Below, in pieces: positions 15,140-61,540 of a stretch of DNA of 64,000 nt (its first letter is position 1; each line of letters starts with the position of its first letter). Below the pieces are notes generated by a model. That model searched no databases and was not told the DNA's origin. It saw nothing but the letters and a program-made list of their open reading frames with translations. Source of the DNA: Chlorokybus atmophyticus (lineage: Eukaryota > Plantae > Mesostigma and Chlorokybus algae); the NCBI GenBank assembly GCA_009103225.1, contig RHPI01000003.1:280900-344899 (forward strand). The letters are read 5' to 3'. Both the position numbers and the translations under genes were made by a program.

Positions 15140-15300
15140 GAGTAGCGTGTTGGGTAGTGAATGGATCCGGCGGTTAACTTGACAATAGTGTGATTGGTAT
15201 CTGCTGTCTCACTCTGCATGCTACTGACTGTGCATGCCACTATGCATGTGCATTTCCGTTTCACATTGCGCACGCACCCACCCATACGCACACCCACACC

Positions 15301-35830: not shown

Positions 35831-35876
35831 CAAGCCACCCCCCTTAAGCTTCTGGGGAAGTTCCAGCTCCAGAGAC

Positions 35877-36861
35877 TCAGTTGTTAACGCAGGTGAGGAA
35901 GGCCGTTGGTGCGGCAATCGTCGCACTAGTACTCCTCCATGGGTATTGCGTCCAATGGGGGCTCCAGACAGTAGCAATGCAGGCCCTTGATACAGCCATC
36001 GCATAGCACCATGAGTACGTCATCGCCGGCGCTGCCGCAGCGTTTACAGCGTATGCTGCGGGCGGGGCGAGGGTGTTGGGCGCAAAGCCAGCTATGTAAG
36101 AAAGGTGACATGGCGCGCAGTCCACCATGTTGTCTTTCACTTTCTCGCCGTTTTTATCGAGGAGGTCCAGCACTCCTGTGGGGTACACCTTAAGTACCTT
36201 GTAGACGGTGCACCCCACGAAGATGTCGAGCGTGTCCTTGGTGGCTACCATGCGGTATGCAAAGTCCCCTGCTTGACACCGCCGTTGGCGCTCCTTGTAG
36301 AAGCCGCTCCGCACGCGCTCGTAGCGCAGGGTGTCGCGGTGCTGTGCGATGCGTAGGTTGTTGAAGGCCATCGGGACGGTGTGCTCGAACAGCGCGGCGC
36401 GTGTGGTAATGTTGTGGTGCATCCGGTTGGGATCGTCGAGGTTGTTCACCACACGATCTACTTCCTGTGCACGAAAGGGAAGCAATGGCGGACGCCCGAA
36501 CAGCAGGTAGTATGGGCTGTACTCGCGCAGAGCCACCTGCTTTGACAATTGGTATCCAAGGGCCACCCACGGAAGGTTGTCGTCCCAGGTGTTCTTCTCA
36601 TATTCCAGCACGTACTTGCGGAGTGCCTTCTTAATTGTCTGCACTATACGCTCAGTGAGACGGTCGGCTTGGGGGTGGTCACGCGAAGTGCGGCGATGAT
36701 CGATGTAGCATCTGTCCAACAAGGTGTTGAACTCTCCTCTGAACTCAGTGCCTTGGTCGGTAATGACCTCAGCGCAGCTGCCGAACCGGCTGAGGACATG
36801 GGAGAGGAAGGCTTGAGACACCCCCCTGCTGCTTTTGTCGGGTAATGGCACCAGCTCCACC
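35877..36861 (-). pseudogene. Element A integrase core, 3' part (5' part at 43835-44300)
   Basis: RYILVMIEHFSK (43830s) continues as WVELVPLPDKSS...ITDQGTEF...HPQADRLTER across the element B insertion. Confidence 0.9.
35890..36111 (-). pseudogene. PHD finger at the C-terminus of the element A integrase
   Basis: [45 protein letters not shown] fits the C4HC3 pattern. The in-frame TAG stands where Trp is expected. Confidence 0.85.
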
Positions 36862-36866
36862 CATTT

Positions 36867-37382
36867 TGTAACAGCACCACCGTCGCCGGTGATGCCCCTT
36901 CAATCCTCTACCCCAACACCCACACCGCCTACGACAAGCCTTTCAGCGGCGTGCCCGCCATTGAGCAGAGAACTGAAAAATGGAGATCACATCAGTTTGA
37001 TGTGACCTTTTATAACAAGAATATATCAGATATATACCTCTCGATAATTAATTCACAACTAGACATCGACCCTACAGATAGGGTAGTTAGGAAATCTAGC
37101 ATGAGCCAATCACAGCTCAGATAAGGTACCTATCGATAAGGTACTTAACGTAAGGTACCTAACGAGATAGTGATCACATTTTATCAGATGTGACACTAAA
37201 TAGGCTTCAATAAGCGGTTTTACACCCATTGGGACTTATTTAAGCTATGATAAAGCATTATAGCCTTTAATAAGCGAGGAACCGTAGAAAAGAGGTATAA
37301 ATAAGCATATTCAGGTACTTATTCATACAAGATAAGTTATTTGGGTAGCAATAATACCCCTATTATTATTGCTCCCGTTACA
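36867..37382 (-). repeat. 3' LTR of element B (516 bp)
   Basis: Direct repeat of 43311-43829 with TG...CA ends. Confidence 0.93.
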
Positions 37383-43300: not shown

Positions 43301-43310
43301 TGGATACCAA

Positions 43311-43829
43311 TGTAACAGCACCACCGTTGCCAGTTATGCCCCTTCAATCCTCTACCTCAACACCCACACCGCCTATGACAAGCCTTTCAGCGGCGTGGCC
43401 GCCACTGAGCAGAGAACTGAAAGTGTGAAGTCACATCAGTTTGATGTGACCTTTTATATCAAGAGTATGTCAATTATATACCTCTTGATAATTAACTCAC
43501 AACTAGACATCGACCCTACAGATAGGGTAGTTACAAAATCTAGCGTGAGCCAATTATGCTCAGATAAAGTACCTATCAATTAGGTACCTACCTATCGTAA
43601 GGTATCCAACGAGATTGTGATCGCATTTCATCAAATGTGCCATTAAATAGGCTTAAATAAGCGGCCTTACACCCATTGGGACTTATTTAAGCTATAATAA
43701 AGCATCATAGCCTTTATTAAGCGAGGAACCGTAGAATAGAGGTATAAATAAGCATATTTAGATACTTATTCATACAGAATGTGTTATTTAGGTAGCAGTA
43801 ATACCCCTATTATTATTGCTCCCGTTACA
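43311..43829 (-). repeat. 5' LTR of element B (519 bp)
   Basis: Direct repeat of 36867-37382, followed on the minus strand by an initiator-Met-like PBS. Confidence 0.93.
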
Positions 43830-44042
43830 CATTTGGAAAAATGCTCGATCATGACCAAGATGTAACGGTTGCCACGTGCCGAGGGTGCCAAATCTCCCAA
43901 GATGTCGGGTCCCCAGCGATAAAAAAGACTGGAGATGGGGAGAGTGCAAGGTGACGCTGCGTGTGTTGAGGCTGGCGCGTACCATGTCACTCTGTTGGCA
44001 TTGACTGACAAACCCCTGCACCTATTTGGACAGCCCATACCA

Positions 44043-46145
44043 TCAAAATTGCGCCCTTACTAGGCTGACTGTACGCTTGACACCGAAGTGTCCAAGCTCA
44101 GTGTGGAGGGCAGTGATGATGCCCTCGCGGGTGGCTGGTGTCAGCACCTCCTTGTCTTCGTTATGGACGCGGCAATACAACTTGTCATCCGCCCACCGAT
44201 AGTGGCGGGTGTGTTGACTGACACGATCTTTCTCTCGTGCACTCATGTTGGAGGGAAGTTGGCCACTTTGAAGGAAGGAGAGTAATGGCTTGTCCAGCCA
44301 TATGTCTTGCTTGGTGTCGGTGGGTGCCAGCTTGGTGTCGTCAACTTTAATGTCGACCGCGTGGACGTCCCTTAGGGGTGTGGTCACTGTGGGGCCGATA
44401 GACTTAAGGGCAGGAATCTCCTCTGCCGTTGAGGTGGCAGTGGTGTTCATCTGGCGCCCTGAACGTACTGCGGCAACAGCAAACATGGCCGCCACGGTGG
44501 GAGCTGCTGCTGCAAGGCCGAGCTCATGCCAAGCTCCGGTTGTATCGTTGATGATGAGGTGAGGGTTGCGATTGAGGCCATCGGCGTCTTTGTTGGTAAG
44601 GCCGGCGCAGTGGTCGATCTCGAAGTCATACTCCTGCAATAACAGGGCTCAGCGAGCAAGTTTTCTTGTAAGATGTTGGTTGGTTATCAACCACTTGAGT
44701 GGCTGATGATCGGTGATCAGCTGAAATTGTCGACCGAAGAAAAAAGGTCTGAATAAGGAGATAGCACACACTGCAGCGAGGCACTCCCCCTCGTAGCTGC
44801 TGTAGTTGGCCGCGGCGCTGTTGTTGCTTCGGCTGGCGTACGACACCACCCGCTCCGGCTTGTTCTCATCGTGCTGCACCAGCACATCCCCCATCTCAAG
44901 CTTACTCCAGGCGGTGTGAAGAATGAAGGGCTTGGTGTAGTCAGGGCATTGCAGGATGGGAGCGGGGGTGAGCCGCCCTTTAGCTCCTCAAACGCCTGCT
45001 GCTGTGGCTCCTTCCATGCAAACTCCATTTCCTTCTTCAGAAGCTCGCTGAGGGGCCGCGCGATTTCTGCGAAGTCCTTCACGAACCGGCTATAGTAGTT
45101 GGCAAGGACCAGAAAGGCGCGCAGGCGCGTAAGGTCCGTTGGAGCAGGGACAGCTGCCAGGGCCTCCACCCTCGCCTGCTGCACGTACACACCGTGGGGC
45201 ACAATTATGTGCCCTAGGTAGGGTACCTTGCGAGTGAAAAAGGTGCACTTGTCGGGGTGCACCGTCATCCTCACCCCCTTGAGTCTCTCCAGCACCTCCT
45301 CAATGTGCTGTAGGTGCTCTTCGTTGCTGCGGCTGAAGGTGAGAATGTCGGAAATGTAGCAAGGCGCGAAGTTCAGCCCCTTGAAGGCTTTGTTTATGAC
45401 GCGCAGGAACTTGGCAGGAGCATTTTTTAGTCCAAAAGGCATGACCTTCCACTAATACAGCTGCCGGTTGCCCCAAGACAGAGGTCTTGTGCTTGTCCTC
45501 CTCCTTAATGGTGATCTAGTTGTACCCTTGTCGCATGTCCGGGATGCTGAAGACGGTACAGTCTCCTACATCATTAAAGACACCCTCAACAGTAGGCATT
45601 GGATACCTGTCTTGTTTGATCTTGTTGTTGAGGGGGCGATAGTCGCCGCACATACGCCGGTCTGTCCAGTTGCCTGCTGAATCCTTCTTCAAGGGCATGA
45701 CGGTCGCGGCCGCAAAGTCCGATGTGGACTCCTCAATTAGGCCTGCATCTAGCGGAGCCTTGCACCTCTGCTCCACCAAGTCTTCTTCCAACTTGGAGAG
45801 ACGGTATTGTCGAAACACCGGTTTGGTGTCCACCAACTCAATGTCCATCTTGTAAACTAAGCAGATGCCCAGTTCCTTCACGCTGAAGCTGAACATACTC
45901 CTCCACTTGTTGAGGAGAGCCTCAAGTTGTTCTCGCTTTTTGCCTGTAGCCATCGGTTCAATGGCATGGGACCAAAAGGTAGCGTTGGCGACTACTAAGA
46001 TTTTCACCACAATGACTGCTGCCTGCTCCTTCATGTGGGCGATTGTAAGGGTGGTGTGTGCCGCTTTGGTCTCTCGCACGCGATCGGCCCACCCCCGCCA
46101 AGTGTTCGAGCTTCTGGAAGGACACATGGCGGTTCTGGACAGCAA
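44043..46145 (-). pseudogene. Element A reverse transcriptase and RNase H (frameshifted)
   Basis: RMCGDYRPLNNKIKQDRYPMP, MPFGLKNAPAKF, FLVLANYYSRFV, VSYASRS..NYSSYEGECLAAV, ITDHQPLKW, LQEYDFEI. Confidence 0.9.
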
Positions 46146-46149
46146 AGCA

Positions 46150-47090
46150 TATTTTGAATAACCACATCATGCTGTTATGGTCTATGGTGCGTCCCAACAA
46201 CTAACATTGCTCACTGTCGGTCAGCGTGGAACCAGTGATACTGCCAAAAGGAAATCCCATGGCGAATTCCCGCTCACGTGCATTGGGTTCCTCCAGTCGG
46301 CCTGTATTGGAATCCAGCACCATGCCTTCGCCTTGGTTGCGTAAGGCGTATCATTCTAGGTAGGACACAAGAGTGGGGAGCGCACGAAGTGGTTGACCAG
46401 GCTGGTTGCACTGGTAAAAGTGCTGGTGATCGTGTCGTGTGACTGGTTGTGCTGTACGACTAGAGTTCAAGATAGCGTCGACTGTCAAATCGCGCAGACG
46501 ACTGATGTGCAGATATTTAGCAGCAAAGAGATCCTCGATTGTAGCCCGGTTGGTCCACTTGGCGCGGACGCGATGAGCACGGGAGCCATGACGCGCTACA
46601 TTAAATTTCAGAGGGTGTCTTAGTAAAAAACTCACCTGTTAAAAGCTGTTGGACACGTGATGGCGCTTATCGTCCTTAGAGTGCACATTTTCAATGTATC
46701 TTGGAGGCCTACACAGCTAGTTGCTCTGCAAGATTTTGATGACACGCATCAGTTCCCATAACAGTCGCGAGCGAGGATCGGCAAGTCGTTGGCCTCTGCC
46801 TGCTCTGGAGTGTCCTTAACACTCCCATCTTGCTATCAGCAGGTCAATGTTGCCCACCGCCAGGAGGTAATCCGCAGTGATTAAACGGATGTCCTGTGGC
46901 AATGCCGATAGCGGCAGTCGCTGCGGGTAGCATTTGTGTAGGTGGCGCATGTGGTGGCTCAAGGCAAGCTGTTCATGTGGATCAGGGCCACAGTAGAAGT
47001 ACTTGATGACCGTCGCGCCGGTGTTGAGGACAGCGGCGAGGCCACTACCTATACCGACCAAAAAGTTCCAACACGGTGATGCCTTGTTGT
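46150..47090 (-). pseudogene. DNMT3-like C5 cytosine methyltransferase domain inside the element A pol
   Basis: Motif I ITVLELFG(+1 nt)GIGSG; LPQDIRLI; motif IV IDLLIARWEC*GHSRAG (Cys codon at 46819-46821); DPRSRLLWELMRVI; motif VI YIENV; motif VIII AHRVRAKWTN; motifs IX/X ERELAMGFP...LLGR. Confidence 0.85.
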
Positions 47091-49785
47091 GGACGGAATA
47101 CATAAAACTCCATTACTCCAGTGGCCACCTGTTGTTGCTCCTGCACCGCAACTTGGTCCTTGTAGAGAGGGAACCGTGAAGTGAGCCGTGGTCTGGTCTG
47201 TAGTGGATGTACGACCACCTGTGCGCGCCAGCGGCGTTCCGCTGGTTTGCGGTGGGCCACTTCTTCAATGGCATCCTTCTGAGATTTGTCGTACGGGATA
47301 GGCGAGTCTTGGCCAGAGTTGTGGGTGACCACCGCAGCTAGTCTATCAGTGATTGTTGAATCCGACCTGTGAGTGGCTGTTGCAGCTGACCTTTAGTGAG
47401 AGCGAGTGCAAGCCACCAGTTCAAGAGGTTACTAGCTCGAGAAATTCTTAAACCTCTCCATCCTCATTGTCCCAATGGGGACGAAACCATGCCTTCTCTG
47501 TCCAGCCCCATGCCAACAGGGAAGTTGAAGTCCTGTCCCAGCAACTGGTCGAAGGATCCTGCGTTGGTGACCACACACTTTTGTATGACCTCGGTGCTGT
47601 GGGAAGGGTCCACCCCTGTCAAGCGAATGCAGAGGGCCTGCTTGGTGATGCCAATCACCTTGTCATGGCTGCCGGTTGCTGTGTCGAGCACATATGGGCA
47701 AGGCATCAGCTCAGCGCTGGTGATGCCAAGATCGCGTGCGAGGTATCGTTCAATGATAACAGGTTGGGCTCCAGACCAGCATCACACGCTTGGGTGCTCG
47801 TCCATTGATAGTGACATGCTTGCCTTCGTTGGCAATCATGGCTGCATTGGCGTGGATGCGCAGCCGCTTAAATCGTCGGTAGCGTGTGCGTGGGGTGACT
47901 GCTGCTGCAGTCTCCTCCGGTGGTGTCAAGCGCAGTGCGGCAAGCGCATCTCAACCAGCTGGGTCTTGAGAACCTTTTTGTCCGCGGCCTGGCCCGAACC
48001 GTCCTTGTCTTGGCTATTGGTATACGCGCTGCAGCCTAAGAGCTGGCTGTGGTTGCCCTGGTTGTGACGCAGGGGGATTGCGCCTGTGTGTGGCCGGGGT
48101 CATACCTGGCGGCGTAGCCAGTGGATGTTAAGGAAACCCTGCAGGACCGGGTGTTTGTGGGCCCGCGTGCAGCCTGTTCTTCCACATTAGTTCAAGATAC
48201 AGCATGAGCTGCCTGCCTGACCAGTGTACCTTCTCATGTGGCTGTTGAATTATTGACCACGTCACTCCAGCAATGATTCCGAGGTATGGGCTGGAGATAC
48301 ATTGCGCGCAAGAGCCGCGCTCTTATATCGTGGGTGATGGTGAGACCCCTTACAATCCCTGCCACGTAGGTATCCCATCTGCCATTGACCACCCCCACTT
48401 CTAGCACCGCTGTTGCTCGTGCCCGCACAATGAGATAAGTCTCTGGCTATTGGACATGCTGCTCAGAAGCAGCTGCGAAGCGTCTGCGTTGCCGCGCTGC
48501 TTCCAACCCTGGCAAACTCGGTATGGCCTCTTGAGCTCCTTCTAGAATGTCAGTGGCTGTCGAGGCAACCTCGTCGTAGGCTTGCCGTAGCAATCAAAGG
48601 AAGGCGTCCAACCATAACAATCTGGTGCCGAATGCGAATCGAGGGACTGCGGGGTGATTGGTGACTAGCCAAGTCACTAGTCTTGCTTGAGCTGCATTGC
48701 CACCTTTCTGCATCCCTAACATCCGTCTCAGGCCGTTGTCTTCTTATCGATGTAGCATGGTTGTTTGTCGCAACAGGGCTGTGCGAAGTTGCTGTTCTTC
48801 GGGTGAGCCTGCTCCATCCCGTTGTGTACACCCTTGTAGTGTGAGGTAGCCTCTTCTGTGATCCCGTTGATCGTCAAGCAAATCTTCCAACAAGGCGGGT
48901 AGCAGCGGGGCGATCACCCCTCTGGTTTGCTGGGCCAGCGCTCTCGCTTGGTCAATGTCGGGCTCACCGACGAGAAGTGTCGTGCTGGATGGTGGGCCAG
49001 CGACTGTTGGTTTTAGGACAAAAGCGCAAGCAGCGTCGAGGGCTTGCGCTCTTGCATTAATTGTTGCCGTTTGGTCCTGCCGCCAGGTGAACGCCTGTTC
49101 CAGAGCGGTGTAGCGCTCATGAAGCCGAACGGTACGGAGGGGTCTCAGTGCTTCGTTGTCACCCAAAGGCATGTCGGCTGCATCAGCAATGTGCCGCTGT
49201 ACGTTGGGTTGTCGGTCTCAATACATCACCGGTAGAGATGGGTTACGGCAAGTCAGGCTGGATCCGCAACTTTGTTCGTAATTTTGTGCAAAGTTTGTTA
49301 GGGATCCGCAAGATCCATAAATAACTTATAGCTACATCCTTAATCCGGTTCGTGCCTGTCACAAAAGCGCTTTTTCGTTGACACTTCCTTGCGAATAGAT
49401 CCACAATTAAGTTGTGGCTATGTCTTAAACAAACTGCCATCAACCTCTGTTAATGCTCTATATTATAAAGATCCGTAATAAACTCGTGACCTCCTCCAGC
49501 TTTTGTGACCCATGATCAAAGGCCCTAACAAGATTGTGACTTGAACTTGATAATACTCTTGAGTTGCAGTCACAATATACTCTTGGAATATAGTCTTGGA
49601 AATCTCCGCAACAGTGATCTCACAACACAGTTTTGTCCTAATCTCTAAGCAAGTTGGGACCAGCTCTAGTTTAATTTGACGAGCTGGCAAAGGGTCCAAT
49701 CAAGTTGTGGCCCCATGCGGAACAAAATTCACACTTAAGGCATAAACAGTTACTTGCTTCTTTATCACTTGCCCTAGCTCTAATG

Positions 49786-49931
49786 TTATGACCGCATCCA
49801 TAACTTCGTTCAGCCCTACACCCAGTGTCTTTGTGTGTTTCTTACTAAGTCCCAAATCTTATGACCACATCCACAACTGTGTCAAGCCTTACACCTAATG
49901 TCGTTGTGTGTTTTTTGCTAAGTCCCAAATG
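49786..49931. repeat. Two tandem copies of a 73-bp unit just beyond the 3' end of the CACTA transposase gene
   Basis: ttatgacc starts at 49786 and 49859, and ttatggc at 49932. The shared body includes ctaagtcccaaat. Confidence 0.8.
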
Positions 49932-50098
49932 TTATGGCTGCAGTACCAAGTTGATTGCTGCTACACCCACATGCAATAAAGTGCACAAACTCTACATTTA
50001 GATTACACAAAGTTTCTCTAGTTCAAGCCAGCAATGCAGGCTGTGACAACATACAAAATTAGCCAACTAAAGACAAAGCATCCAACTACCCTCCAGCT

Positions 50099-53000
50099 CT
50101 AAGCCTCTATAGCAGCTGCACAATCGCTCCTCTCTTCTCAATGACATCCCTCATTGGAAACCACCTGCGATGCATCTGCAAAACCAAGTGTTAGTGAGAA
50201 TGGCTGATATTAAAGTAAGTTAGTGCATCATCACCTGTTGCACAATAAGTGACGTGGGTGAGACAGGACCATCCCTAACAGCTTGCGCAAAAAAACTGTA
50301 CGTAGTGCAAGGCAAAATAACCACAGTCTGATTCATTACGCTGTTGTGGCACCTGCGCTAATGGTTGCAGGCATTAGTCAGTGCAATCCTCCTTGTCGCA
50401 ACAACGCAACGCATTGTGCAAACACTCACTTTTGGTGTTATCAATGGCATGTTGACCAGTGAGAAGCGATCACCAGGGCTTGTACGCCGCACGCGCTGCC
50501 ACATGAACTCGAGCTATGCCCTGAACGGCCCATTCACGTTCACATTGAATCCGTGCTTTGAGTCAAGATGCAGAAGGAAAGGAGGCGTGTCGCTGCCGGG
50601 CTCACCAGCAGGGTTGCACACAATCACCATCGACCAATGCACTCTGCCATCAATTGCTGCCATGAATAGGTGTTCCACACGCACTGCAAGGCATGCAAAC
50701 TGTGATTTCACGAGGACACGATGATTGCCTTTGGTTGACGGGTGCCACAAGGTAGTTGAAGCTGAAGGGGTCCTGCAACCATGACCAGCCCGCAACACGC
50801 TGGATGCTCTCAGCTGCTAAGCTGTAAAAGAAGGGCGATAGCATGACCACTTGATCTCGTCGCCTATTCCAACATTCTTCTTGCAAGTACCTACCATTGC
50901 ATGAATTAGTGATTTCGTGTTAGCTGACTATTCTCCAAATCAAAAGTAAGCTTGCAAAGTGCAAGCCATTAAGTTACCTGCAGTAAAAATTGATGATGGT
51001 ATCGTTGAGCCATTCACCGGGCTGCAGCGTTGCAATGTCGTGTTAAGTAATTGGCACCCGAGAATCACCTGCTGTAGGATAGTAAAAGGTGTCGAGCACC
51101 AAAGGGCCTGCACTCGCGCGTGAAGTCACCATATCCTCAGCACCGCCATCACCCAAGTTGTTGTTTTTGCTAAGCGCAGCCTCATCCATGTCTTCATATC
51201 CGTAACCATATTAATCACCTGTGCGTCAACCTCTGCGCACACGCATTGTTGGTTAGTACTATGTGGCTATGCATAAGTACACAAACAGCAAGCAAACATA
51301 ACACGTACACACCTTGTCCACTGCGGGCAGGTGCCTGCGTGCGGGCATTACTCTCATCCACTTGCAATTGACTGACTTTGGGAACATCATCAGCAACACC
51401 CTCCTTCCCTTCCTTCCTCGGCAGACACCTTGGCATCTTGACAGGTGCACCACCCTCCTCCAAGACAGCACAGCGCATACATGTCACGAGGTTCGTGCGA
51501 CCAGTTGAATGCTGCTTGCAGAAGCTGACTCGGCAAGTTGCGCAGCGCTGCACCGCCGGAAGCTCACAGTTTCAGCAGCTGCATTGGAAAATGCATGGTG
51601 AAATCAACAACGTAATGAGGTTCACACAATGTGAGTTTGATTGTTAAAATTGGCCTACCTGTGCCTTAGGCATTCCCATTCGGCCTCCTCGTCTTTTAGC
51701 AGTGGTTTCTCCAAGCAGCGGGGGTGGTAGCTCTTGAGGCAACCCTGCTCGTCGCAGCAGACAACATTACCACCATCTTTGCAAACAAAGCAGTAGTCTT
51801 CAGCTTCATCCGTGAAGACAGCTTCAGCTTCCAAGTTAGCTTGCGCCCTACCAAAGCACGTAAAGTGTGTGTGTGGTAGAAGTTGTTGCACAGCACAGCA
51901 CAACAAGGAGGACACCTTTTGTACTCCCAATGCCATGCGCGGAGCGTAGACCACGACCAATTGCTTTGCCCGCTGGACTCTCCAGGTCCCAATCAAACCG
52001 ATAGGATTGTGTTATCCTGACGGTTTGGTAGGGACCTGTGTCAACAAAGCCGCAGTGCGTGTGCAGCATGTGCTTACTGAATGAGGGCGCTTGATCCCCC
52101 TGCGCATGATACTTCGACGGTCTTTGGTCGACACAACAATGACGTGTTTGTTTTTAACATCTACGCCTTCAAACCACTGCCCACGAACCTAGTCATGTGT
52201 TGCACATTTAAGTGATTGAGATTAAGAAGGCACTGTGCAATTTGCGTCACACACATCCCACCTGATCACACGAGATGTGAGTTTACTTTGTGTAAAACGG
52301 CTTCCGCCGATCCACCAAAGGGAAGCCGTCACGAAACTTGACAGCCGAAGGGTTGTACCACTTGGCTCTCACCAGCTGATGCTCAATACCGGCGATGCAT
52401 ACCACATCAAACGACTGCACGCGCCCGTACCAGGTCACTGCTTCTGCTGGGCTTGCACACTCAGCATAGCCAATGGTAACTACTCCACAATCGATGGTCT
52501 CCATGCGTGACTCCATACTCTCTGCTCTGAACTGGCCAATGTCCTTGTATACGTCACGCTTATAACGCGACAGCTGGCTAGGCAGTTGCAGAAGGCTGTC
52601 CACATGATCGGTCAGAGGTCGACTTGGCCTCCATTCACAAATGTCATTGTTGAGGTTTTCCTCGCTGGCTTCTTGGCCTGCCCTCTTGGCTCTGCTGTTT
52701 TGCTGTCGCTGCTTCGCCTTCCAAGCTTGAAATTCTCTGCAGCATTCATATGTGAGTTGAAAATTCGCAGAATATTTAACTCGACACTCCTTTTGGCAAG
52801 CAGAAGCTCACCTTTTCAGCCTGTTGAACTGTTTGTCATTCTCCGCTAGCCAGTGCTCCAGCTGCTGGCGCAACTTGCTCTTGGCCCCGAACCGCACGAG
52901 ACGCTTTGCAAGCAGTCTAAAACCGTCATCCTGCCGCTGCTTTGTTGACCTCAAGGTGATAGTTGGGAACACTGTCTGCAGGTGATCCATCTGCGTGTTA

Positions 53001-56000
53001 ACCATTGTGTGGATGGCATACCGGTTCACAAGCAGACGTTAGCATGCATTTTGTCATTCATGTAGGTATGTCAGTGACTCACCTCCTGCAAGTGCTGGCT
53101 TCAATGGCTTGGCGCGCCAAACCCTTCTTTTTCACAAATTCAATAAGCCTCTCATAAGCCCACTCCCAGTAGTCTCGAACAGGACCCAACCACATGCATT
53201 GGTCCGCCAAGTGACCCAATAAATGCAGCATGCTGGTGAGACACGTGCGTGGGAAGTAAAGCTCCACCTCGCAATGCACCTCCCACACCATCAACTGCAT
53301 TGACAAATTATGTCAACTTTGCATGCGCCAAGATGCAACACACAGACCCTGAAGGCATGGTTGCTGACATACTCACACGCAATTCTTCCAGTTGGGATTG
53401 TTCAACTTCCAAAGCCATGAGTCGTTGATAGACTTCACAAAGCTTGGTTATGGTGGCCTTTTACTCAGCTCCTATCCCTTGTGCACAGCGCAAAACGTAC
53501 TGGAAGACAACAGACCATAGGTTGTGCTTGTCGTGGGACTTCGTAGACCCTGCATATAGTTGCACATTGCGAGAAAATATGCAAGCTGTTGTGTCATGTG
53601 GCAATGCTGGTGGGAACAGACAAGCACAACCTATGCTGTCAACTCACCTGGATTTTTGGAGAATGACTGCAGCTTTGCTCCAAAACTGCTCGGAACCTTA
53701 ACCGCGTCTATCAACTCATCCAGATCATCTATGTCAATCACCCATGGTGCTCTGGGCAGTTTTGTGACCTCAACCTCCTCATCATCCTTGTGAAAAAACT
53801 TCGTTTGCATGCGATGTTGTTAGCATCAACTACAAGGACATGACACATCCCGCATGCGCTCTGCTGCATAGCATGTGTCATCATGATGATGCATCAAACC
53901 TTGGGCCATAGCTCATGTATCCTGCCCTGCTTTTCAAGATCGCGGTATGCGCTGATGTTGTCACGACTCCCATTACCGGATAAGAGCTTTGCAAAATCGG
54001 TGGCCATATTTGCACAAATATGCATGGGCCCATTGACATGTCCAGCTAAAAATTTTGCCAACGGCATCCAGTAAGGCAGCTTGTGGAAGCAGCCAACGCC
54101 AAATATGCCCGATGCCTTTGATGGGTGGTTGGGTAACTTGTGGGGCAGTGTGGACTTCTGTGCTGCTGTACCCTGCCTGCAATGCATGACACGGTACGCC
54201 GACAGCATATCAAGGACAAGGACGACTCGCGCGTAGGCAATGCTGAGTTACCCACCTGAGCATAGAGACTGCAGTTCGTTGTGCTGGAGGTAGTCGCGTT
54301 TTCGGTTCACCAAAGCGCTCATCACTTCGATAAGGATGGTCGGGGGGCAACCAACGTCGATAGTTGTCGTAGATCACTTTATTCAGCTCAGGTACGTAAA
54401 CTCCACAAATAACGCATTTGGCGCACCCGCTCTTTGAGCCGTGAGGCATCTGCATGGCGGCCTTTGACAGCGCTGCATAGCAGTACTAGGGTCAAGAGAG
54501 GTCAAGACATGTTAAACTGCTATAGCAGCAAGTGCTAATTGATTGTACACATCTGAATACTCGTGAACCACAACTTCTAGAATGACCTTGCACGTGAAGT
54601 AGTACTCCTCATTGTGTGCATCGTACATTTTTATTTCTACATAAGGAAGGCATGCATTCAAATCCGCCCCACCCCCACAAAACAAACACCTACCATACCA
54701 CAGCTCTAGCAGTTGGTCAACAATCGGTTCAAGATACGGTTGTAGGGTTGCCGGCTGCTTGGGTCCAGGTATGACAGCAGCCAAAAATGTAGCATCTGAC
54801 TTGTTTATGATGTCCACGGGCAGGTTGAGGACTGACACTGCAATCAACTACAGCTCGTAGTTTCTTGCGTACTTCAGAAGCAATTCATTAACGACATTCA
54901 CCTATATCATATTATATTCTTCAATATATATATATATATATTGAAGAAGAAACATTTGGTGATTATGCACCTAGCCACCTTCGTGCGGGTCTTTGAAGGG
55001 GCTGAATCCGTCAAGAAAGAGAGCTAGCCGTAAATGTCTTGTTCATCTTTGAACTGTGGATATTGCCGCTCTGTCTCCTTGAACATCTTTGAATCTGCAA
55101 ATGGTCATACAGTTAGCAGAACGTTCACACATTAAGGTTGCACATTGAATTGAACAGTACCGTGGATAGATCGCACAACAGGGTCATCATTTGCTCCTCG
55201 CGATGTCATGTGGGCAGTCATGCATTTGCCAATGCTTGGCTTCTTGAACATGGCTCTTAACGCTCCCGCAATCTCAAAATAGCGTACAATTTTCCATGGG
55301 ACCCTTTTGCTAGCTTCCCATTTGAATCGCTTGGCCTTGCACACTGATGCAACACCAGTGTTATGGGTTCACAGATCACTATGAGCTGAGTGCAGAGACC
55401 AGAATGAATTAACCATCACGTACCTTGACAGCGCTTCAAGTGCGCGTTGCGACCGTAGTAAACGGTGCCGTCACAACTGTAAGCATGACATTACTTGAAC
55501 CCCATATTCAAATAACCAGTCATATTCAGTGCGCCATAAATGCTTTTCGGGAGGTTGTTACTCTCAGGTAGCGCATGAGCGTGCAGGAATCTGCATGAAC
55601 GCATGTCACTTTGCAGCCAAGTTGACACGGTAACTATTTGCTTAAGGCAAGTTCTATAGCCTTGGTTACCTAAATAGGCTGTAGACCAAGGCAAACGGTG
55701 CATCGTGGCGTTTTGCAAGGGCAAGCAAGCTGAGCACGAAGCCCAATGTAGTTGTGCGCGACCCAATAATCAATTGGTGTTCACGCAAACTTGATAGCGC
55801 ATCTCTGACTGCGGCCATGTGCACTTCTTCGTCTCTATAAAGCCCAGCAAACATCTCCCTGGCCTGTTCAGTATGAACTGCTGCATCCTCCATGGTATCC
55901 AAGACTTGGACCTTGATGGAAGACCTGGTTCAGCCTTAACTTTATGGTTGTCTTTTCTGGGCATTGCTGCATCAGGTTCTGCATCAGTCTCCTTACTTCC

Positions 56001-56681
56001 CTCGCTAGGTGTTGGCGACCAATACGTCGCTGTGCCTGTTCCACAATGTCATGGTGAGTGCAACATATTGCTGGTATAGCAATATTCCTCCACGTGGGAG
56101 TCAGTGTCCCTAACCTAGATAACTACTTATCACCATTCACACCTGCCAGCTCCTGAGACTTATCAAGGATCAGTACGTTGTTTTGACCGCCATTGTTAAC
56201 ACGAGAAGTATCTATGTTGTCGTTTACAATCACAACCACATCAATTGCAGATACAATCAAGAGTCAACAACATGCAGAGTTAAATACCGAATTTGGTATA
56301 CAAACAAATTATTTACTACAGTCTGCACTTTATACCTCGCACCTCATGCTGCAGATCACAAGCATCACCAGTAAAGCCGCTGAAACAGGGTGGTGGAGTG
56401 GAATGGTTCAGCACGTCAGCAGCGTGGAGACTGTCATTGTCAGCGAAAACATTAGCCCCAGTCTCTTGGGTGGAAGGATAAAAACATCTGTCCGCCTCTT
56501 CAAGAGATGGAATGAGGTGAGCATACTGAGGGAGAATTGGCTCTAATTGTCCACCCCACAAGTTTTGCCCTCCTGCTTCATGCGTAGAATTCCAAGTACG
56601 ATAGCGGTATTTGCAAACGCGGGCTCCCTTACAACTCTTGCATCTGCATCTCTTGAACTTCGGCAGCCTATCCTTTGGCAT
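50099..56681 (-). pseudogene. CACTA/EnSpm-type transposase gene (multi-exon) with C-terminal PHD-C5HCH and ULP1/C48 protease domains
   Basis: N-terminal RCRCKSC; NLPKSIY; LALFLDGFSPF; AVIPGPKQP..LQPYLEPIVDQLLELW; YRRWLPPDHPYR; ELYFP....SMLHLLGHL...GPVRDYWEWAYER (DUF4218-like); YGRVQSF..LVRAKWY (DUF4216-like); CFVCKDGG.VVCCD..GCLKSYHPRCL..WEC..HC.NC....RCATCRVSFCKQH; WLNDTIINFY, HWSMVIVCNP, LLHLDS, VPQQRNESDCG, WFPMRDV. GT-AG introns and some premature stops. Confidence 0.82.
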
Positions 56682-56794
56682 CCTTGCAACTTCGCTAGAC
56701 AACTACCAACAACCTTAGGTGATAGCCAAACCTCCAAGTTGCACCACTCCTCATAACCAGCTCCTCCAATGCAATGTCGTGTGCAAAGGTTGAA

Positions 56795-56976
56795 TAGGGT
56801 TTCGCAGGAGTTGTAGTCAGGGTTTCAATTAGGGTTTTTGAACCGGATTGTTGAAACTAGATCCGCTCAAGTGTCTCTACTCCTTTTCTAACTTCATAAT
56901 TCCATTCCAACGTGCTCCCATATCTGTGTACGTGCTCCCTACGTGCTTCCGAGAAATGCATCTGCTACTAGGGTTT
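56795..56976. promoter_or_regulatory. Telo-box (AAACCCTA/TAGGGTTT) cluster in the divergent intergenic region
   Basis: TAGGGTTT at 56795, 56830 and 56969, plus CAGGGTTT at 56818, between ATG 56681 (-) and ATG 56987 (+). Confidence 0.5.
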
Positions 56977-56986
56977 GCGTGGTAGT

Positions 56987-58660
56987 ATGCGCGGCGTCAA
57001 AGTGTGTAGCTTCTGCAAAGCATACGTGGTTAGGAATGGTAACTTGAAACGACTGTAATGTCACCACGACAAGTGCAAGCTGTACACTGAGCAGTATGGC
57101 TGCTATGAGGTCTGCTGGCACCATAAGGCCAGGGGAGACAATGTGAGGCAATGCAGACGGCTGGCAATATGCATGAGGCCAAAATTTTTTGGGGAGGAGT
57201 GCACTTGCCTGGATTGCTCGCTCTCCAAGTTTGAATGGGACGGCGAGCCTATGGATCACCTGCCTTGGGCTCGGCCTGGAGCATATTGAGATGGGCAGGT
57301 ATGTAATGTGGTTCGACGTCAGCTCACACGCAATGGCCGCGGCAAGTCCACTACTGCCCAAGATGATCATGACCACAAAGTGAGTTCAAATGTCCTTGTA
57401 AGCAGCAACACAGTGCTCACATACATGAACAACTCACTTCTGGTGGATGGTAGGGAAACACAGTTGTCGACACCGTCAACGACGTCGCGACACTGGCTGC
57501 TTGGCGAAAGAAGATAATTTATGAGGGGCAGGCTTTGGTGGCAAGTCATGTTGTGGTGTATTGGCCTGGAATGAGCACCTGGTATTCAGGTCGCATTATC
57601 GATATAGATGCAAATACAAGTATACAGGTAATCATATACTTCAGAGTACGCAATGTACATATGTGTACTCATTTAAGCACTTGCCGTGGCATAGGAAAAC
57701 ATACCATCCAGCACGACGATTACAATGAGGATCCACGGCTTCACATCTTGACCAAAAAGTGGAACATTGTGGCGATCCCAAAGCAGAGCCTTGTTCCGGA
57801 CATGCAGGTAGTGATGGTTCGTGTTGGGTCAATCCTGCCTGAAACTTCAGGACTTGCCTGGGGGAGAGCTCAATCCTTGGCCCAAGCCACCGCCACTTCT
57901 TTTACCGCGAACCGTATGCGACCCAAGCGGCAGGCGTTATAGGCCTCGTGCACTGGACCTTTTTTGCGGCGCGGGTGGAGTAGCCATGGGCCTGTACAGG
58001 GCAGGTTTTAATGTTGAGGGCATAGACAACAAGCCTCAACCATCATACCCATTTAAGTTCAATCAGCTGGATGCGCTAGACGCCGACCTGTCCCCATACC
58101 ATGCATTATGAGCGAGTAATCCATGTCAAGCGCTCAGTGGTGCCATCCCTTCTTGTCAATGAGCCACTTACGGAGATCACTGGGATCACGTCAACCTAAT
58201 TGCACCCATGAGAACAAGGTTGCAGCTGAGCGGCAAGCCATGGGTCATACAGAACGTAGCAGGGGCATTTGCGCACATGACTGCTCACCTCAAGCTATGC
58301 GGCAGCATGTTCAACCTTGACGTGTATCGGCATCGCATTTTTGAGACGAACCCCCCGCTGTGCTCAGACTTGAGATGCAACCACGCTGACTCTGCCCTTG
58401 GAAAGCTGTCCACCCACCCGGTACAGCGCAGGCAATTGAAACCTGGAGAGAGGCAGATCTACCCGATGTATGGTTGGGCATCCTGTCGTGGCACGATTGC
58501 ACGCTGGCAGTCAGCAATGCAGGTTTACTGGATGGAAGAAGAACATGAAATAAGAAATGCAATTCCACCTGCTTACTCTCAGCATATAGGTCGACTGCTG
58601 CTAGAGGCCATGGGCTTCATGTGGACTATACACCGTTTTACTGAGGTGGTCAGAGTGTAG
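56987..58660 (+). pseudogene. Spliced gene: Cys/His-rich domain, Tudor domain, phage/bacterial-type C5 DNA methyltransferase
   Basis: MRGVKVCSFC...CHHDKC...GCYEVCWHH...C...C...CTCLDC; Tudor-like ALVASHVVVYWPGMSTWYSGRIIDID..KHTIQHDD; MTase RALDLFCGAGG, GIDNKPQPSYPFKFNQLDALD, HAL*ASNPCQ (Cys at 58124-58126), GKPWVIQNV, LCGSMFNLDVYRHRIFE, AMQVYWM, EIRNAIPPAYSQHIG. Several in-frame stops. Confidence 0.85.
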
Positions 58661-58806
58661 TTATTATGTCTTGCAGCGCACTTGTTGGTATGACGACAGA
58701 CAAAGTGTTGTTTGCCAATGCCAAGATACACAAGCACTGCAACAGCATATGTCAACAACAACAATACCAACAATTACGTGCCTGTTGTAAAGTGTATATT
58801 CAAACC

Positions 58807-59560
58807 TGCCTGTGCTGCGGCAAAAAGGTGTTTGCTGCAAGCCGCTGGGGCAGCCTTGGGTATAACCCCTCAGTGGCCTTGTTGAGATGGACGATGAGAA
58901 GCCTACACATACACATGTGTGCACGCCAACAGCAACACCAACATGAGGAAACCATGCACTACAAGACCTTAGCATATGCACATGCTACATCGTGACTAGC
59001 GACTCTACACCAACAAGAGTGTTTTAGATGTATGTCCGCGCCGCGCCTGAATCTCTATTCAACTCATGTCCGCGCTTGGACCTTCTAAAGTCTTCGCCTG
59101 GAACCTTCCGGCGGCTATTAAGGGCAAGCTTACCGACTGATCTATTGACTTAAATGTAGGAATATCCTCAACAGGCCTTGCCTGTGCTGCGGCACAAAAG
59201 TTGTTTGCTGCAAGCCACTGGGGTAGCCTTGTGCATAACCCCTCAGTGGCCTTACCTGAGCTGCGGCACAAAAGGTGATTGCTGCAAGCCGCAGGGGCAG
59301 CCTTGGGCATAATCCCTCAGTGGCCTTGCCTGTGCTGCGGCAAAAAGGTCTTTGCTGCAAGCCGCTGGGGCAGCCTTGGGCATAACCCCTCAGTGGCCTT
59401 GCCTGTGTTGCGGCAAAAAGGTGTTTGCTGCAAGCCGCTGGGGCAGCCTTGGGCATAACCCCTTTAGGGCCTTGCCTGTGCTGCGACAAAAACGTGTTTG
59501 CTGCAAGCCGCTGGGGCAGCCTTGGGCATAACCCCTCAGTGGCCTTGCGGCAAAAAGGTG
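58807..59560. repeat. 73-74 bp minisatellite (one isolated copy at 58807, five tandem copies from about 59181 plus a partial)
   Basis: Unit cctgtgctgcggcaaaaaggt.tttgctgcaagccgctggggcagccttgggcataacccctcagtggccttg starts at 59181, 59255, 59329, 59402 and 59475. No spacers. Confidence 0.92.
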
Positions 59561-61540
59561 TTCTTTCGGTGTGTGCTTGCGCTAGCACTGTGTCTCTCAA
59601 AAGTTATTTCCCTGCTTTATTTTTGACTCTACTGTTGGTTAACTACGGTGTGTGATCCATAGGTAAAAAGCTACCATTTAGCGATGGCCGGTCGCTTTAG
59701 GTCCAGCGTGTTAATCTCGTCGAACATGCGGTAGGTTTTAGGTCTTGACTCAGTCGCTTGCATGCATTTAACAGAGGGTATGATGATCCAGCCGGCTGCT
59801 TTTAAGACAGCAGGTAAACCAAAGCTCGCATGCCAGGCATGGTGTGTTTGTGGATGAGACTCAGATCCGAGTATTTGGCTCCGTGTTTTGGGTGTCTTGA
59901 CATTCTTACAGCTGCTATCAACAGGTTGAGCATTGCCTGCAGCATGGTTGCAGGACACCGCCAGTCACGGTGCCCAAGAAGTTGGCAAGAGCTCCAGCGA
60001 CGACAGGGACATATACATGCATCCTTGCATGCGTATGACATGAATGTGCATGTGTGTATATGGTGTCCAGTCAGCTGGGGCAGTTGATTGTAAGCCCTCA
60101 TGTGTGTGTATGCGCGCGCGCGTGTGTTGCAAAAGTCCGTGTTCACTTTTTTTGCTGCGCAAACATACCTTGTGTTTGTGCATATGTGAGTGCAGTTGTG
60201 AGGGGCTTTTCCAACAGCATGTTTGGGCAATTCTACTGCCAGTGTTAGGAGCTTGCACGCCTGACTTGTGTCCAACAGTTTTGAGCGCAACCCGCTTTGC
60301 CTTACAGGCTGTGCTACGGCCATGAGGTAATACAAAGTACAAGGTCAGATCTTTGCATTATCCTTGCACAAGGCCTATAGTTTGGTGGTAGTATGATAGT
60401 TTGATAGTTGTATAGTTGTTGTGTAGTTGTATAGTTTGGTGGTAGTTTGGTAGTTGTTGTGTAGTATAGTCGTAACGTAACTAATCTGCTAGTCACTATG
60501 TTGTTGCGAACACAATTGTGGCGGTTGTGCCTGAGCTGATCTGCTGCTAGATCTCCAAGTTGCACAAAGGCACACACTCCACTGCTATTAGTAATTGCAC
60601 AAGCAACAGCCACACTTAGAGAATTACCAACAGAGCAGCTCAGCGGTAACCCGAGTGTAAAGGGCAAACAAAGTGTGTGTAGACCAATGGTCATTGCGAC
60701 GAGTCACTAGGTTCACTGGGTTTACTAGGAGGGTCGCAAGTAGGGAAAACTTTACTACAAATTGGTGTGAGACTGGTACCGGGCGTTGCACGAGGTGCAG
60801 GGACTTAAGAGCCAGTAAACACACTCCAGCGTGCAGCAATATTGTTGTCGCACTCGATCACAATGCGCAGGCCAGCAGCGCCATAGGTGCCCGAGTCAAT
60901 GATAGTGCGAGTAGGAAGAGGCGCATCTGGAGGCGAGGGAGTGTTCTCATGCACGGAGACTGCCACATACACACCGGTTTATACAGTAGCTGCAATTGCA
61001 ATGGGTGCCTAATGAACACTTCCACGAGTTGAAAGCTCCCAATTGCATAACTGGACCTGACAAACAAGTTTACTGAGTAACTCGCATGTTGCATCGCATT
61101 CATGCGTAAACATGCGCCAGAAGTTGATGCAAATACATAGGCAGTGCCTCTATTGTTATAGACATGAACTGGACACGCATTCAGGCAGTAGCATAGCATG
61201 ACATGCACGGCATGTAACGCGCAAGTGTGTTGCATGGTACTAATCAGAGCTGTGCATATATATAGGCGTTCTTATCATAGCAGGACAAACATATGCACAC
61301 TACACAGGCAAACTCAAGCCAAATCGCACACAAGGCATACGCATGTACAAACAATGCGCAACAGTATGGTACATGCATAGTGGCATGCATAGTCAGCAGC
61401 ATGCAGAGTGACATAGCGCACGCAACTCACACCATGTACAGCGAGAAAGATACCTGATGATAGCGAGCATCGCCAGAGTCCACATAGCCGTTCCATGGTT
61501 GTATCAAGACTGTTGATGATATTTTTATATCGCATCAGCC
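59060..61540 (-). pseudogene. Degenerate multi-exon gene with a Cys-rich motif (WKCSLGTHCNCSYC)
   Basis: GT-AG-bounded exon PVMQLGAFNSWKCSLGTHCNCSYCINR (about 60975-61056) and other short exons (e.g. ARPVEDIPTFKSIDQS). The motif resembles the end of zf-4CXXC_R1-type fingers. Gene model incomplete. Confidence 0.35.

What the first reader, a model, noticed from the sequence alone, without database searches (positions are those of the whole stretch)
50099..58660. Candidate new system: CACTA-type DNA transposon with a divergent Cys-rich/Tudor/phage-type DNA methyltransferase gene
Seen: the transposase-PHD-C5HCH-ULP1 gene (ATG 56681, minus) and a spliced zinc-finger-like/Tudor/C5-MTase gene (ATG 56987, plus) are about 305 bp apart, share a telo-box-rich spacer and are decayed to a similar degree. 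The MTase is the compact LDLFCGAGG...PQP.YPF...PCQ...LCGSMF...RHR.FE...AIPPAY type that I recognise from bacteriophage and bacterial orphan methylases, not from eukaryotic DNMT1/3/CMT. Inference: a DNA transposon captured a prokaryotic or viral methylase, added introns and chromatin readers, and encodes a reader-writer-deSUMOylase kit. The TE-borne DNMT reports I know concern retrotransposons.
Basis: partly seen in the sequence, partly recalled or inferred. Interest (0 to 1): 0.87.

Follow-up and report, generated by a model that had tools for sequence, protein, structure and literature searches.

The report
Dead CACTA transposon with viral-type methyltransferase
This stretch of an algal genome holds a broken copy of a cut-and-paste (CACTA) transposase gene, head to head with a broken gene that joins a histone-reader-like module to a small DNA cytosine methyltransferase of giant-virus/phage type. 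The pairing is unusual for a DNA transposon, but this copy is dead and its ends cannot be found.

Summary
On the minus strand (ATG 56681) lies a CACTA/EnSpm-type transposase gene continuing into PHD, C5HCH-like and ULP1 (C48) modules. On the plus strand (ATG 56987) lies a three-exon gene: a Cys-rich part, a Tudor-like part (weak support) and a compact C5 DNA methyltransferase. A 305-bp spacer separates them and holds 3 of the window's 4 exact telo-boxes.

Both genes are pseudogenes. The methyltransferase gene has four in-frame stops, a 2-nt deletion and QNV in place of the catalytic ENV.

The methyltransferase belongs to the compact family common in actinophages (38% identity). On a careful tree it sits inside a starred clade of metagenomic proteins. 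All three members whose long contigs I inspected lie in giant-virus-like gene contexts.

Related copies in two public runs differ from it mostly at third codon positions (20/26, P 7e-6). The gene family has therefore been under purifying selection.

Not shown here: I found no terminal inverted repeats or target-site duplication. The left flank is a pile of Ty3/gypsy elements.

The scan has already noted the same head-to-head pair on more than ten other stretches of this genome, some reported as bounded elements. This window adds a dead, unbounded copy. I found no paper describing a C5 methyltransferase on a CACTA element.

The parts
50107..56681 (-). Pseudogene for a CACTA/EnSpm-type transposase continuing into PHD, C5HCH-like and ULP1 (C48 protease) modules. 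It is read in many pieces (introns plus breaks).
   Evidence: ATG 56681; Pfam pieces; last exon ends 'RGAIVQLL*' at about 50107.
54210..54847 (-). Transposase_21 (tnp2) core, in two pieces.
   Evidence: E 3.5e-6 (26.8 bits, just under the 28.6 cutoff) and E 0.009, covering profile positions 57-104 and 147-210.
53079..53306 (-). DUF4218, the domain that accompanies CACTA transposases.
   Evidence: E 4.2e-9, 36.7 bits, above cutoff 27.
51655..51996 (-). NSD-type PHD finger.
   Evidence: PHD_NSD E 8e-7 (29.7 bits, above cutoff 23.9); zf-HC5HC2H; PHD.
51215..51553 (-). C5HCH-like Cys-His stretch (weak).
   Evidence: PF17982 E 0.035, below cutoff.
50278..51210 (-). ULP1/C48 protease region with two in-frame stops (51043-51045 and 50974-50976).
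   Evidence: Peptidase_C48 E 3.1e-5, 24.3 bits, above cutoff for 50278-50373; motifs LNDTIINFY, HWSMVIV, LHLDS, QQRNESDCGYF.
56682..56986 (.). 305-bp spacer between the two start codons, with three exact telo-boxes (56795-56802, 56830-56837, 56969-56976) and one AACCCTG (56818-56824). Likely a shared bidirectional promoter (inferred).
56987..57298 (+). Exon 1 of the cargo gene: Cys-rich part, with stops at 57056 (TAA) and 57287 (TGA; related copies read CGA).
   Evidence: no family match.
57454..57619 (+). Exon 2: first half of the Tudor-like module. It is flanked by GT..AG introns at 57299-57453 and 57620-57694.
   Evidence: Frames and splice sites read from the sequence; PDB 7de9 (PDS5C Tudor) E 0.18; LBR_tudor E 0.087.
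57695..58660 (+). Exon 3: second half of the Tudor-like module, a linker, and the compact C5 DNA methyltransferase (57920-58657). Breaks: 2-nt deletion after 57825, stops at 58109 and 58160, QNV for ENV at 58250.
58750..59548 (.). 73-bp repeat region just downstream of the cargo gene: a lone unit at 58807-58881 and a 5-copy array at 59174-59548. It is abundant in the public runs. Whether it belongs to the element is unknown.

Best explanation
The stretch is a dead copy, without recognisable ends, of a CACTA/EnSpm-family DNA transposon lineage that carries a cargo gene beside its transposase.

Shown:
- The transposase gene is fused to an NSD-type PHD/C5HCH-like reader and a ULP1 (SUMO-protease-type) domain.
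- 305 bp away and divergently oriented lies a three-exon gene: a Cys-rich part, a Tudor-like part and a compact C5 DNA methyltransferase.
- The methyltransferase's nearest relatives lie on giant-virus-like contigs, within a family otherwise common in phages.
- Both genes are broken here.
- The methyltransferase gene family exists in several diverged copies whose differences are mostly synonymous.

Inferred:
- The telo-box-rich spacer acts as a shared bidirectional promoter.
If the Tudor is PDS5C-like, the mark would be the gene-body mark H3K4me1.
- The enzyme then writes 5mC at a short sequence context on or around the element. That would give the transposon control over its own chromatin state: self-limitation, or mimicry of host gene-body methylation.
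- The methyltransferase was taken from a giant virus, or from a source shared with giant viruses.
For: - Domain hits on both strands.
- Head-to-head layout with three telo-boxes in the spacer, against about one expected in the whole 64 kb.
- phrog_363 at E 4e-12 and actinophage methyltransferases at 38% identity, E 2e-18.
- Best of 1.84 billion representatives is 45% identical, E 1.5e-29.
- Careful tree: the window groups with P0001, P0002, P0024 and P0077 at 97/87*, and with seven more at 99/94*. The three phage sequences fall elsewhere.
- P0002, P0006 and P0152 lie among topoisomerase II, RNR small subunit, RNA polymerase Rpb1 with an intein, PolB and dense intronless ORFs.
- The motif 'DP.G.R.RP..LDLFCG.GG' and 'CNH...SLG' are shared with that clade.
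- A profile of the clade hits solved C5 methyltransferases (3g7u at 2e-6, DNMT1, DNMT2, M.HaeIII).
- GT..AG introns fit the frame changes.
- Public runs hold near-identical contigs at depth about 3, plus 80-90%-alike contigs at depth 21-35, over the cargo gene.
- 20 of 26 listed differences in the methyltransferase domain are third-position and 20 of 26 are synonymous, P 6.7e-6.
- Leads, not support: earlier notes of this scan report the same pair on more than ten other stretches, some with defined ends.
Against: - No TIR pair, CACTA/CACTG terminus or 3-bp TSD frames the two genes. Joint mobility is therefore not shown here.
- In the runs laid, the transposase part is covered only thinly, while the cargo gene has deep, diverged relatives. 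The gene may therefore also travel with other elements.
- Tudor identity is weak.
- No RNA run holds the stretch, so expression is unknown.
- This copy cannot work: four stops, one frameshift and ENV changed to QNV.
- Target sequence, histone ligand and benefit to the element are all inferred.
Confidence: 0.65

Rival explanations
1. The Cys-rich/Tudor-like/methyltransferase gene is a separate repeated unit. Here it merely lies beside, or was captured once by, this CACTA transposase. In that case the pair is not a stable 'kit'.
For: - In runs X1 and X2 the cargo gene has deep (21-35) relatives 80-90% alike, while the transposase part has only thin cover.
- No common ends were found.
Against: - The two start codons are 305 bp apart with a telo-box cluster between them. 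Random juxtaposition would rarely give this layout.
- Earlier notes report the same head-to-head pair many times (unchecked).
- A slowly evolving cargo gene and a fast-evolving transposase would give the same depth pattern.
Confidence: 0.2
2. The methyltransferase gene is a remnant of an endogenised giant virus that happens to lie next to a transposon.
For: Nearest relatives lie on giant-virus-like contigs.
Against: - It has two GT..AG introns and eukaryote-type N-terminal parts.
- It lacks the MBD insert of its nearest viral-type relatives.
- No other viral-type gene lies within 64 kb. The neighbours are gypsy elements and a transposase.
- Several diverged copies exist.
Confidence: 0.05
3. 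It is a decayed duplicate of a host gene (a domesticated orphan DNMT) with no link to transposition.
For: Orphan viral-type DNMTs are reported in many eukaryotic genomes (PMC12344493). Purifying selection was found in the family.
Against: - The copy lies in a TE-dense region, head to head with a transposase. It is broken, and deep diverged copies exist.
- No relative above about 50% identity exists among 1.84 billion representative proteins.
Confidence: 0.07

Closest known systems
DNMT-carrying retrotransposons (KnitGypsy-Dnmt3 of Klebsormidium nitens; SymbioLINE-Dnmt and SymbioDIRS-Dnmt3 of Symbiodinium), de Mendoza et al. 2018, PMC5890265
   Same: A mobile element encodes its own C5 cytosine methyltransferase, and the copies are under purifying selection. 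A gypsy element noted as carrying a DNMT3-like domain lies 4 kb away in this same window.
   Different: Those are retrotransposons with the DNMT inside the polyprotein, and the DNMT is mostly of eukaryotic Dnmt3 type. Here the carrier is a cut-and-paste CACTA-type element, the DNMT is a separate spliced gene of giant-virus/phage type, and it is fused to a reader-like module.
TET/JBP-carrying DNA transposons of fungi (Plavaka, Kyakuja, Dileera, Zisupton), PMC12730594; SET-carrying HarbingerS/MuDR cited there
   Same: Cut-and-paste DNA transposons, including the CACTA-related Plavaka, carry a separate gene for an enzyme that edits an epigenetic mark.
   Different: That cargo oxidises 5mC or methylates histones. 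Here the cargo writes 5mC, the opposite direction, and it is of viral type with a reader fusion.
Mariner-1_OLpv, a Mariner transposon inside a giant-virus (Organic Lake phycodnavirus) genome that encodes transposase, an EcoRII-like endonuclease and a C5 DNA methylase (Bao and Jurka 2013, PMC3627910)
   Same: A DNA transposon with a C5 methyltransferase gene, in the giant-virus world from which this methyltransferase's relatives come.
   Different: That one is a restriction-modification-like cassette in a viral genome, on a Mariner. Here there is no nuclease partner, the location is nuclear, the gene has introns and a reader fusion, and the transposase is CACTA-type.
Compact orphan C5 methyltransferases of actinophages (phrog_363; e.g. 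Gordonia phage Yakult gp45, Mycobacterium phage Bobby gp114)
   Same: Same compact domain of about 210-240 residues with the same motif set; 35-38% identity over the C-terminal 145 residues.
   Different: On the tree the window's domain is not with the phage sequences. It sits in a separate starred clade with metagenomic proteins whose inspected members lie in giant-virus-like contexts. The phage enzymes have no reader part and no introns.
Plant CACTA/MULE elements carrying ULP1-like protease domains (from my own knowledge, not checked here)
   Same: A C48/ULP1 domain associated with a plant-lineage DNA transposon.
   Different: Here ULP1 follows an NSD-type PHD/C5HCH-like reader in the transposase gene and is accompanied by a methyltransferase gene.

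Membership tests
CACTA/EnSpm superfamily transposon | Transposase with the tnp2 (Transposase_21) core and the accompanying DUF4218 | tested here: met
   Transposase_21 in two collinear pieces (26.8 and 15.7 bits, each under the 28.6 cutoff on its own). DUF4218 scores 36.7 bits, above its cutoff.
CACTA/EnSpm superfamily transposon | Terminal inverted repeats beginning CACTA/CACTG | tested here: not met
   No pair of inverted CACT[AG] or CAC-starting termini frames the genes. Local alignment of 48.5-50.15 kb against the reverse complement of 58.66-61.6 kb gives only chance-level matches. The copy may be truncated.
CACTA/EnSpm superfamily transposon | 3-bp target-site duplication | not testable with these tools
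   No ends were found in this window, and the rest of the genome cannot be searched with the tools given.
CACTA/EnSpm superfamily transposon | Subterminal repeat arrays | tested here: inconclusive
   73-bp arrays lie at 49782-49936 and 59174-59548, but they are unrelated to each other.
C5 cytosine DNA methyltransferase (PF00145 superfamily) | Motif I (FxGxG), motif IV (PCQ), motif VI (ENV), motif VIII (RxR) and motif X, in canonical order | tested here: met
   LDLFCGAGG, NPCQ, RHRIFE and AIPPAY are in order. Motif VI reads QNV in this dead copy, where relatives have ENV. The window's own Pfam hit is sub-threshold (E 0.01). phrog_363 scores E 4e-12. Relatives P0006 and P0021 hit PF00145. The clade profile hits solved C5 methyltransferases at E 2e-6.
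Giant-virus-like clade of compact C5 methyltransferases (P0001, P0002, P0024, P0077 and seven others) | Groups with the clade on a maximum-likelihood tree | tested here: met
   97/87* for the 5-row set and 99/94* for the 12-row set; SH-aLRT 84 and 93 on the 122-row quick tree.
Giant-virus-like clade of compact C5 methyltransferases (P0001, P0002, P0024, P0077 and seven others) | Large insert between motifs VIII and IX, an MBD in the nearest subclade | tested here: not met
   The window has only a short linker there, like the phage enzymes. MBD is found in P0001, P0024 and P0077.
Tudor domain (plant PDS5C/MSH6 type) | Recognisable Tudor fold or profile match with an aromatic cage | tested here: inconclusive
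LBR_tudor at E 0.087. Exon 2 against PDB 7de9 gives E 0.18, with 'V.V.WP...Y.G' shared. Exon 3 start alone gives no hit, and the exons alone give no Pfam hit.
ULP1/C48 cysteine protease | His, Asp and Gln...Cys catalytic motifs, and a profile match | tested here: met
   Peptidase_C48 at 24.3 bits, above cutoff 20.7, for the Cys box. HWSMVIV, LHLDS and QQRNESDCGYF are present. The domain is broken by two stops.
DNMT-carrying retrotransposons (de Mendoza 2018) | DNMT inside a reverse-transcriptase-encoding element | tested here: not met
   The partner gene is a DDE-type transposase, not a reverse transcriptase. The DNMT is a separate divergent gene.

The most novel reading that the evidence does not exclude
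Intact members of this family are active CACTA transposons that use a histone-mark reader (PDS5C-like Tudor, H3K4me1) to aim a giant-virus-derived cytosine methyltransferase at chromatin. In this way they write host-like (gene-body-type) methylation on themselves or their surroundings and steer their own silencing. That would be a reader-writer module owned by a DNA transposon, with the PHD-ULP1 transposase as a second chromatin-acting arm.
Probability: 0.12. Interest if true: 0.85.

Novelty: new variant of a known kind. Interest (0 to 1): 0.5.

Why it matters
Mobile elements that carry their own DNA methyltransferase are so far described for retrotransposons, and for one Mariner inside a giant virus. 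DNA transposons are known to carry 5mC oxidases (TET/JBP) or SET enzymes.

A nuclear cut-and-paste transposon family would extend that picture if it carries a reader-fused methyltransferase of giant-virus type that has been kept under purifying selection. It would link three things usually studied apart:
- gene flow from giant viruses to algae;
- cargo capture by transposons;
- the origin of lineage-specific 'orphan' DNMTs.

It would also offer a compact natural reader-writer enzyme to test.

This window adds limited weight. It holds a dead, unbounded copy. It does supply an exon model, a list of the breaks, a supported tree placement, and codon-position evidence that the family's methyltransferase was functional.

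Tried and rejected
- Element ends: I looked for inverted repeats, for CACT[AG]- and CAC-started inverted termini with or without a 3-bp TSD, for local alignment of the left flank against the reverse complement of the right flank, and for self-matches by blastn. None gave a credible pair. The only inverted match (15185-15268 against 61352-61435, 79%) spans 46 kb and includes host-looking genes, so I rejected it as the element's ends.
- More cargo to the right (OTU and others, as earlier notes describe for longer copies): ORFs at 58.7-64 kb have no Pfam hit.
- Other copies and relatives: patterns from the methyltransferase found no relative in metagenome or viral contigs. The transposase's first exon found nothing in the protein collection. 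A look-up of earlier findings by sequence was blank.
- Expression: no RNA run holds the stretch.
- Joints in the laid contigs (57744 to 57920, and 57744 to 58169): I first read these as splicing and then rejected that. The ends are not GT..AG, and a closer contig runs straight through with only a 2-nt difference. They are therefore length variants between DNA copies.
- Cys-rich part: no Pfam hit and no Atlas look-alike.
- DNMT3-like pieces of the neighbouring gypsy: no Pfam hit with the pieces I chose.
- Species name: not established, because the organism names of the runs are coded. A Klebsormidium-like alga is only a guess, from the gypsy-DNMT3 note and the telo-boxes.
Full report
**What is there.** The window is eukaryotic and rich in transposable elements.

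On the minus strand, an ATG at 56681 opens a 121-codon first exon. Downstream pieces match:
- Transposase_21/tnp2 at 54512-54847 (E 3.5e-6) and 54210-54455 (E 0.009);
- DUF4218 at 53079-53306 (E 4e-9);
- an NSD-type PHD finger at 51655-51996 (E 8e-7);
- weakly, C5HCH at 51215-51553 (E 0.035);
- Peptidase_C48/ULP1 at 50278-50373 (E 3e-5, above the curated cutoff).

The ULP1 motifs HWSMVIV, LHLDS and QQRNESDCGYF are all readable. Two in-frame stops (51043-51045 and 50974-50976) sit inside one contiguous conserved block. This gene is therefore a pseudogene.

**The divergent gene.** The plus-strand ATG at 56987 lies 305 bp from the minus-strand ATG. From the frames and the sequence I read three exons:

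| Part | Coordinates | Content |
|---|---|---|
| Exon 1 | 56987-57298 | Cys-rich |
| Intron 1 | 57299-57453 | GT..AG |
| Exon 2 | 57454-57619 | First half of the Tudor-like module |
| Intron 2 | 57620-57694 | GT..AG, phase 1 |
| Exon 3 | 57695-58660 | Rest of the Tudor-like module, linker, methyltransferase |

The methyltransferase domain (57920-58657) reads in one frame with motifs I (LDLFCGAGG), IV (NPCQ), VIII (RHRIFE) and X (AIPPAY). Motif VI reads QNV where every relative has ENV.

Breaks in this gene:
- stops at 57056, 57287, 58109 and 58160;
- a 2-nt deletion after 57825. A 94%-alike contig in a public run has GG there, which carries the Tudor frame straight into the methyltransferase frame.

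Related copies read C at 57287, giving CGA where the window has the TGA stop.

**The spacer.** Exact AAACCCTA occurs four times in 64 kb, against a shuffle mean of 1.0. Three of the four lie within 182 bp of the spacer, all in one orientation. I read this as a shared bidirectional promoter. That is an inference; telo-boxes are known plant promoter elements.

**What kind of methyltransferase.**
- Pfam's DNA_methylase sees only motif I in this copy (E 0.01). PHROGs family 363 (DNA methyltransferase) matches both halves (E 4e-12 and 6e-4).
- tblastn finds 321 phage records, mostly actinophages, at up to 38% identity and E 2e-18.
- Against 1.84 billion representative proteins the best match is 45% identical (E 1.5e-29), with no closer relative.
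- The top hits carry a large insert. P0002, P0006 and P0152 lie on contigs with topoisomerase II, RNR small subunit, RNA polymerase Rpb1 with an intein, PolB and dense intronless ORFs, which are giant-virus-like contexts.
- P0001 and P0160 lie on short virus-like contigs without transposases.
- On a careful maximum-likelihood tree of 65 rows the window's domain groups with P0001, P0002, P0024 and P0077 (97/87*) and with seven more such proteins (99/94*). The three phage enzymes fall elsewhere. The 122-row quick tree agrees. For alignment and trees the domain was read through with X at the two stops.
- A profile of the clade hits solved C5 methyltransferases: 3g7u at 2e-6, DNMT1, DNMT2 and M.HaeIII.

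So 'phage type' is right as a family resemblance. 'Giant-virus-type clade within that family' is the more exact description. The window's copy lacks the MBD insert that its nearest relatives carry.

The Tudor call is weak:
- LBR_tudor at E 0.087.
- Exon 2's only PDB match is 7de9 (E 0.18). This is the H3K4me1-binding Tudor of Arabidopsis PDS5C (10.1101/2022.05.28.493846). The aromatic 'V.V.WP...Y.G' pattern is shared.
- The exons alone give no Pfam hit, and exon 3's start alone gives no PDB hit.
- The Cys-rich part matches nothing.

**Is it one mobile element?** This window does not show it.
- No TIR pair, CACTA terminus or TSD frames the genes.
- The left flank (31.6-49.9 kb) is three Ty3/gypsy elements, one with an LTR pair at 36867-37382 and 43311-43829.
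- The right flank has a 73-bp repeat region and no recognisable gene.

The copy is probably truncated or overwritten.

**Evidence from public reads.** Two runs, held as contigs with coded organism names, contain near-identical contigs at depth about 3. They also contain contigs 80-90% alike at depth 21-35, restricted to the cargo gene. The transposase part is only thinly covered.

Among the differences listed for the methyltransferase domain, 20 of 26 are at third codon positions and 20 of 26 are synonymous (P 6.7e-6). Exon 1 shows no such bias.

The methyltransferase gene family is therefore multi-copy and has evolved under purifying selection. The deeper subfamily lacks 57745-57919, which is 59 codons once the 2-nt deletion is counted. 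It is a length variant, not an intron.

Depth from contigs is not a copy number, so I draw no count from it.

**Earlier notes of this scan.** More than ten other stretches of the same genome were noted with the same head-to-head pair. Follow-ups describe bounded copies of 11, 17.8 and 22 kb, and one case beside a Plavaka-type transposase. I could not read those stretches. They are leads, and they raise my odds that the pair is a family trait, but they are not independent tests.

**Literature.**
- DNMTs on retrotransposons (Klebsormidium gypsy-Dnmt3, Symbiodinium LINE/DIRS) are described in PMC5890265.
- Orphan viral-type DNMTs in eukaryotic genomes are described in PMC12344493.
- TET/JBP genes on Plavaka, Kyakuja and other DNA transposons, and SET genes on HarbingerS/MuDR, appear in PMC12730594.
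- A Mariner in a giant virus with a C5 methylase appears in PMC3627910.
- Searches combining CACTA/EnSpm, methyltransferase, Tudor, giant virus and Klebsormidium found no paper on a CACTA-borne DNMT. The library does not hold every journal.

The family-level idea is a new variant of a known kind and is worth a proper genome-wide study: a CACTA transposon lineage with a PHD-ULP1 transposase and a reader-fused, giant-virus-type C5 methyltransferase cargo. This particular copy is dead and unbounded, and the scan has already found better ones.

Noticed in passing
P0001, P0024, P0077 (metagenomic proteins; loci L001, L012): The nearest relatives of the window's methyltransferase carry a methyl-CpG-binding domain (MBD, E 2e-6 to 3e-8) inserted between the catalytic motifs, on virus-like contigs. 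That makes them writer-plus-reader enzymes in one chain. The window's copy lacks this insert.
   Followed up: partly
window 57745-57919, as seen in runs X1 and X2: A deeper, 84%-alike subfamily of the cargo gene lacks this 175-nt stretch, which is 59 codons once the window's 2-nt deletion is counted. Another contig joins 57744 directly to 58169, which skips motifs I-IV.
   Followed up: partly
window 59174-59548 and 58807-58881: A 73-bp tandem array (5 copies, 91% alike) and a lone unit 300 bp upstream lie just after the cargo gene's stop. Contig depth there is the highest of the stretch (up to 99), so the unit is abundant in the genome.
   Followed up: no
window 31597-49900: Three Ty3/gypsy-type elements lie in a row on the minus strand: one a chromovirus with a chromodomain integrase, and one with LTRs at 36867-37382 and 43311-43829 (90% alike). 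The third is the one that another note calls DNMT3-carrying. The pieces I tried at 46351-47329 gave no Pfam hit.
   Followed up: partly
window 15185-15268 and 61352-61435: An 84-bp inverted match at 79% identity, 46 kb apart, beginning CACTCTGCATGCT. It is probably two copies of a small repeat rather than the ends of one element.
   Followed up: no
P0003, P0004, P0005, P0017 (metagenomic proteins): Several relatives are tandem fusions of two complete compact C5 methyltransferase domains in one protein.
   Followed up: no
window 49782-49936: A second, unrelated 73-bp tandem repeat (2.1 copies) lies between the gypsy pile and the ULP1 end of the transposase gene.
   Followed up: no
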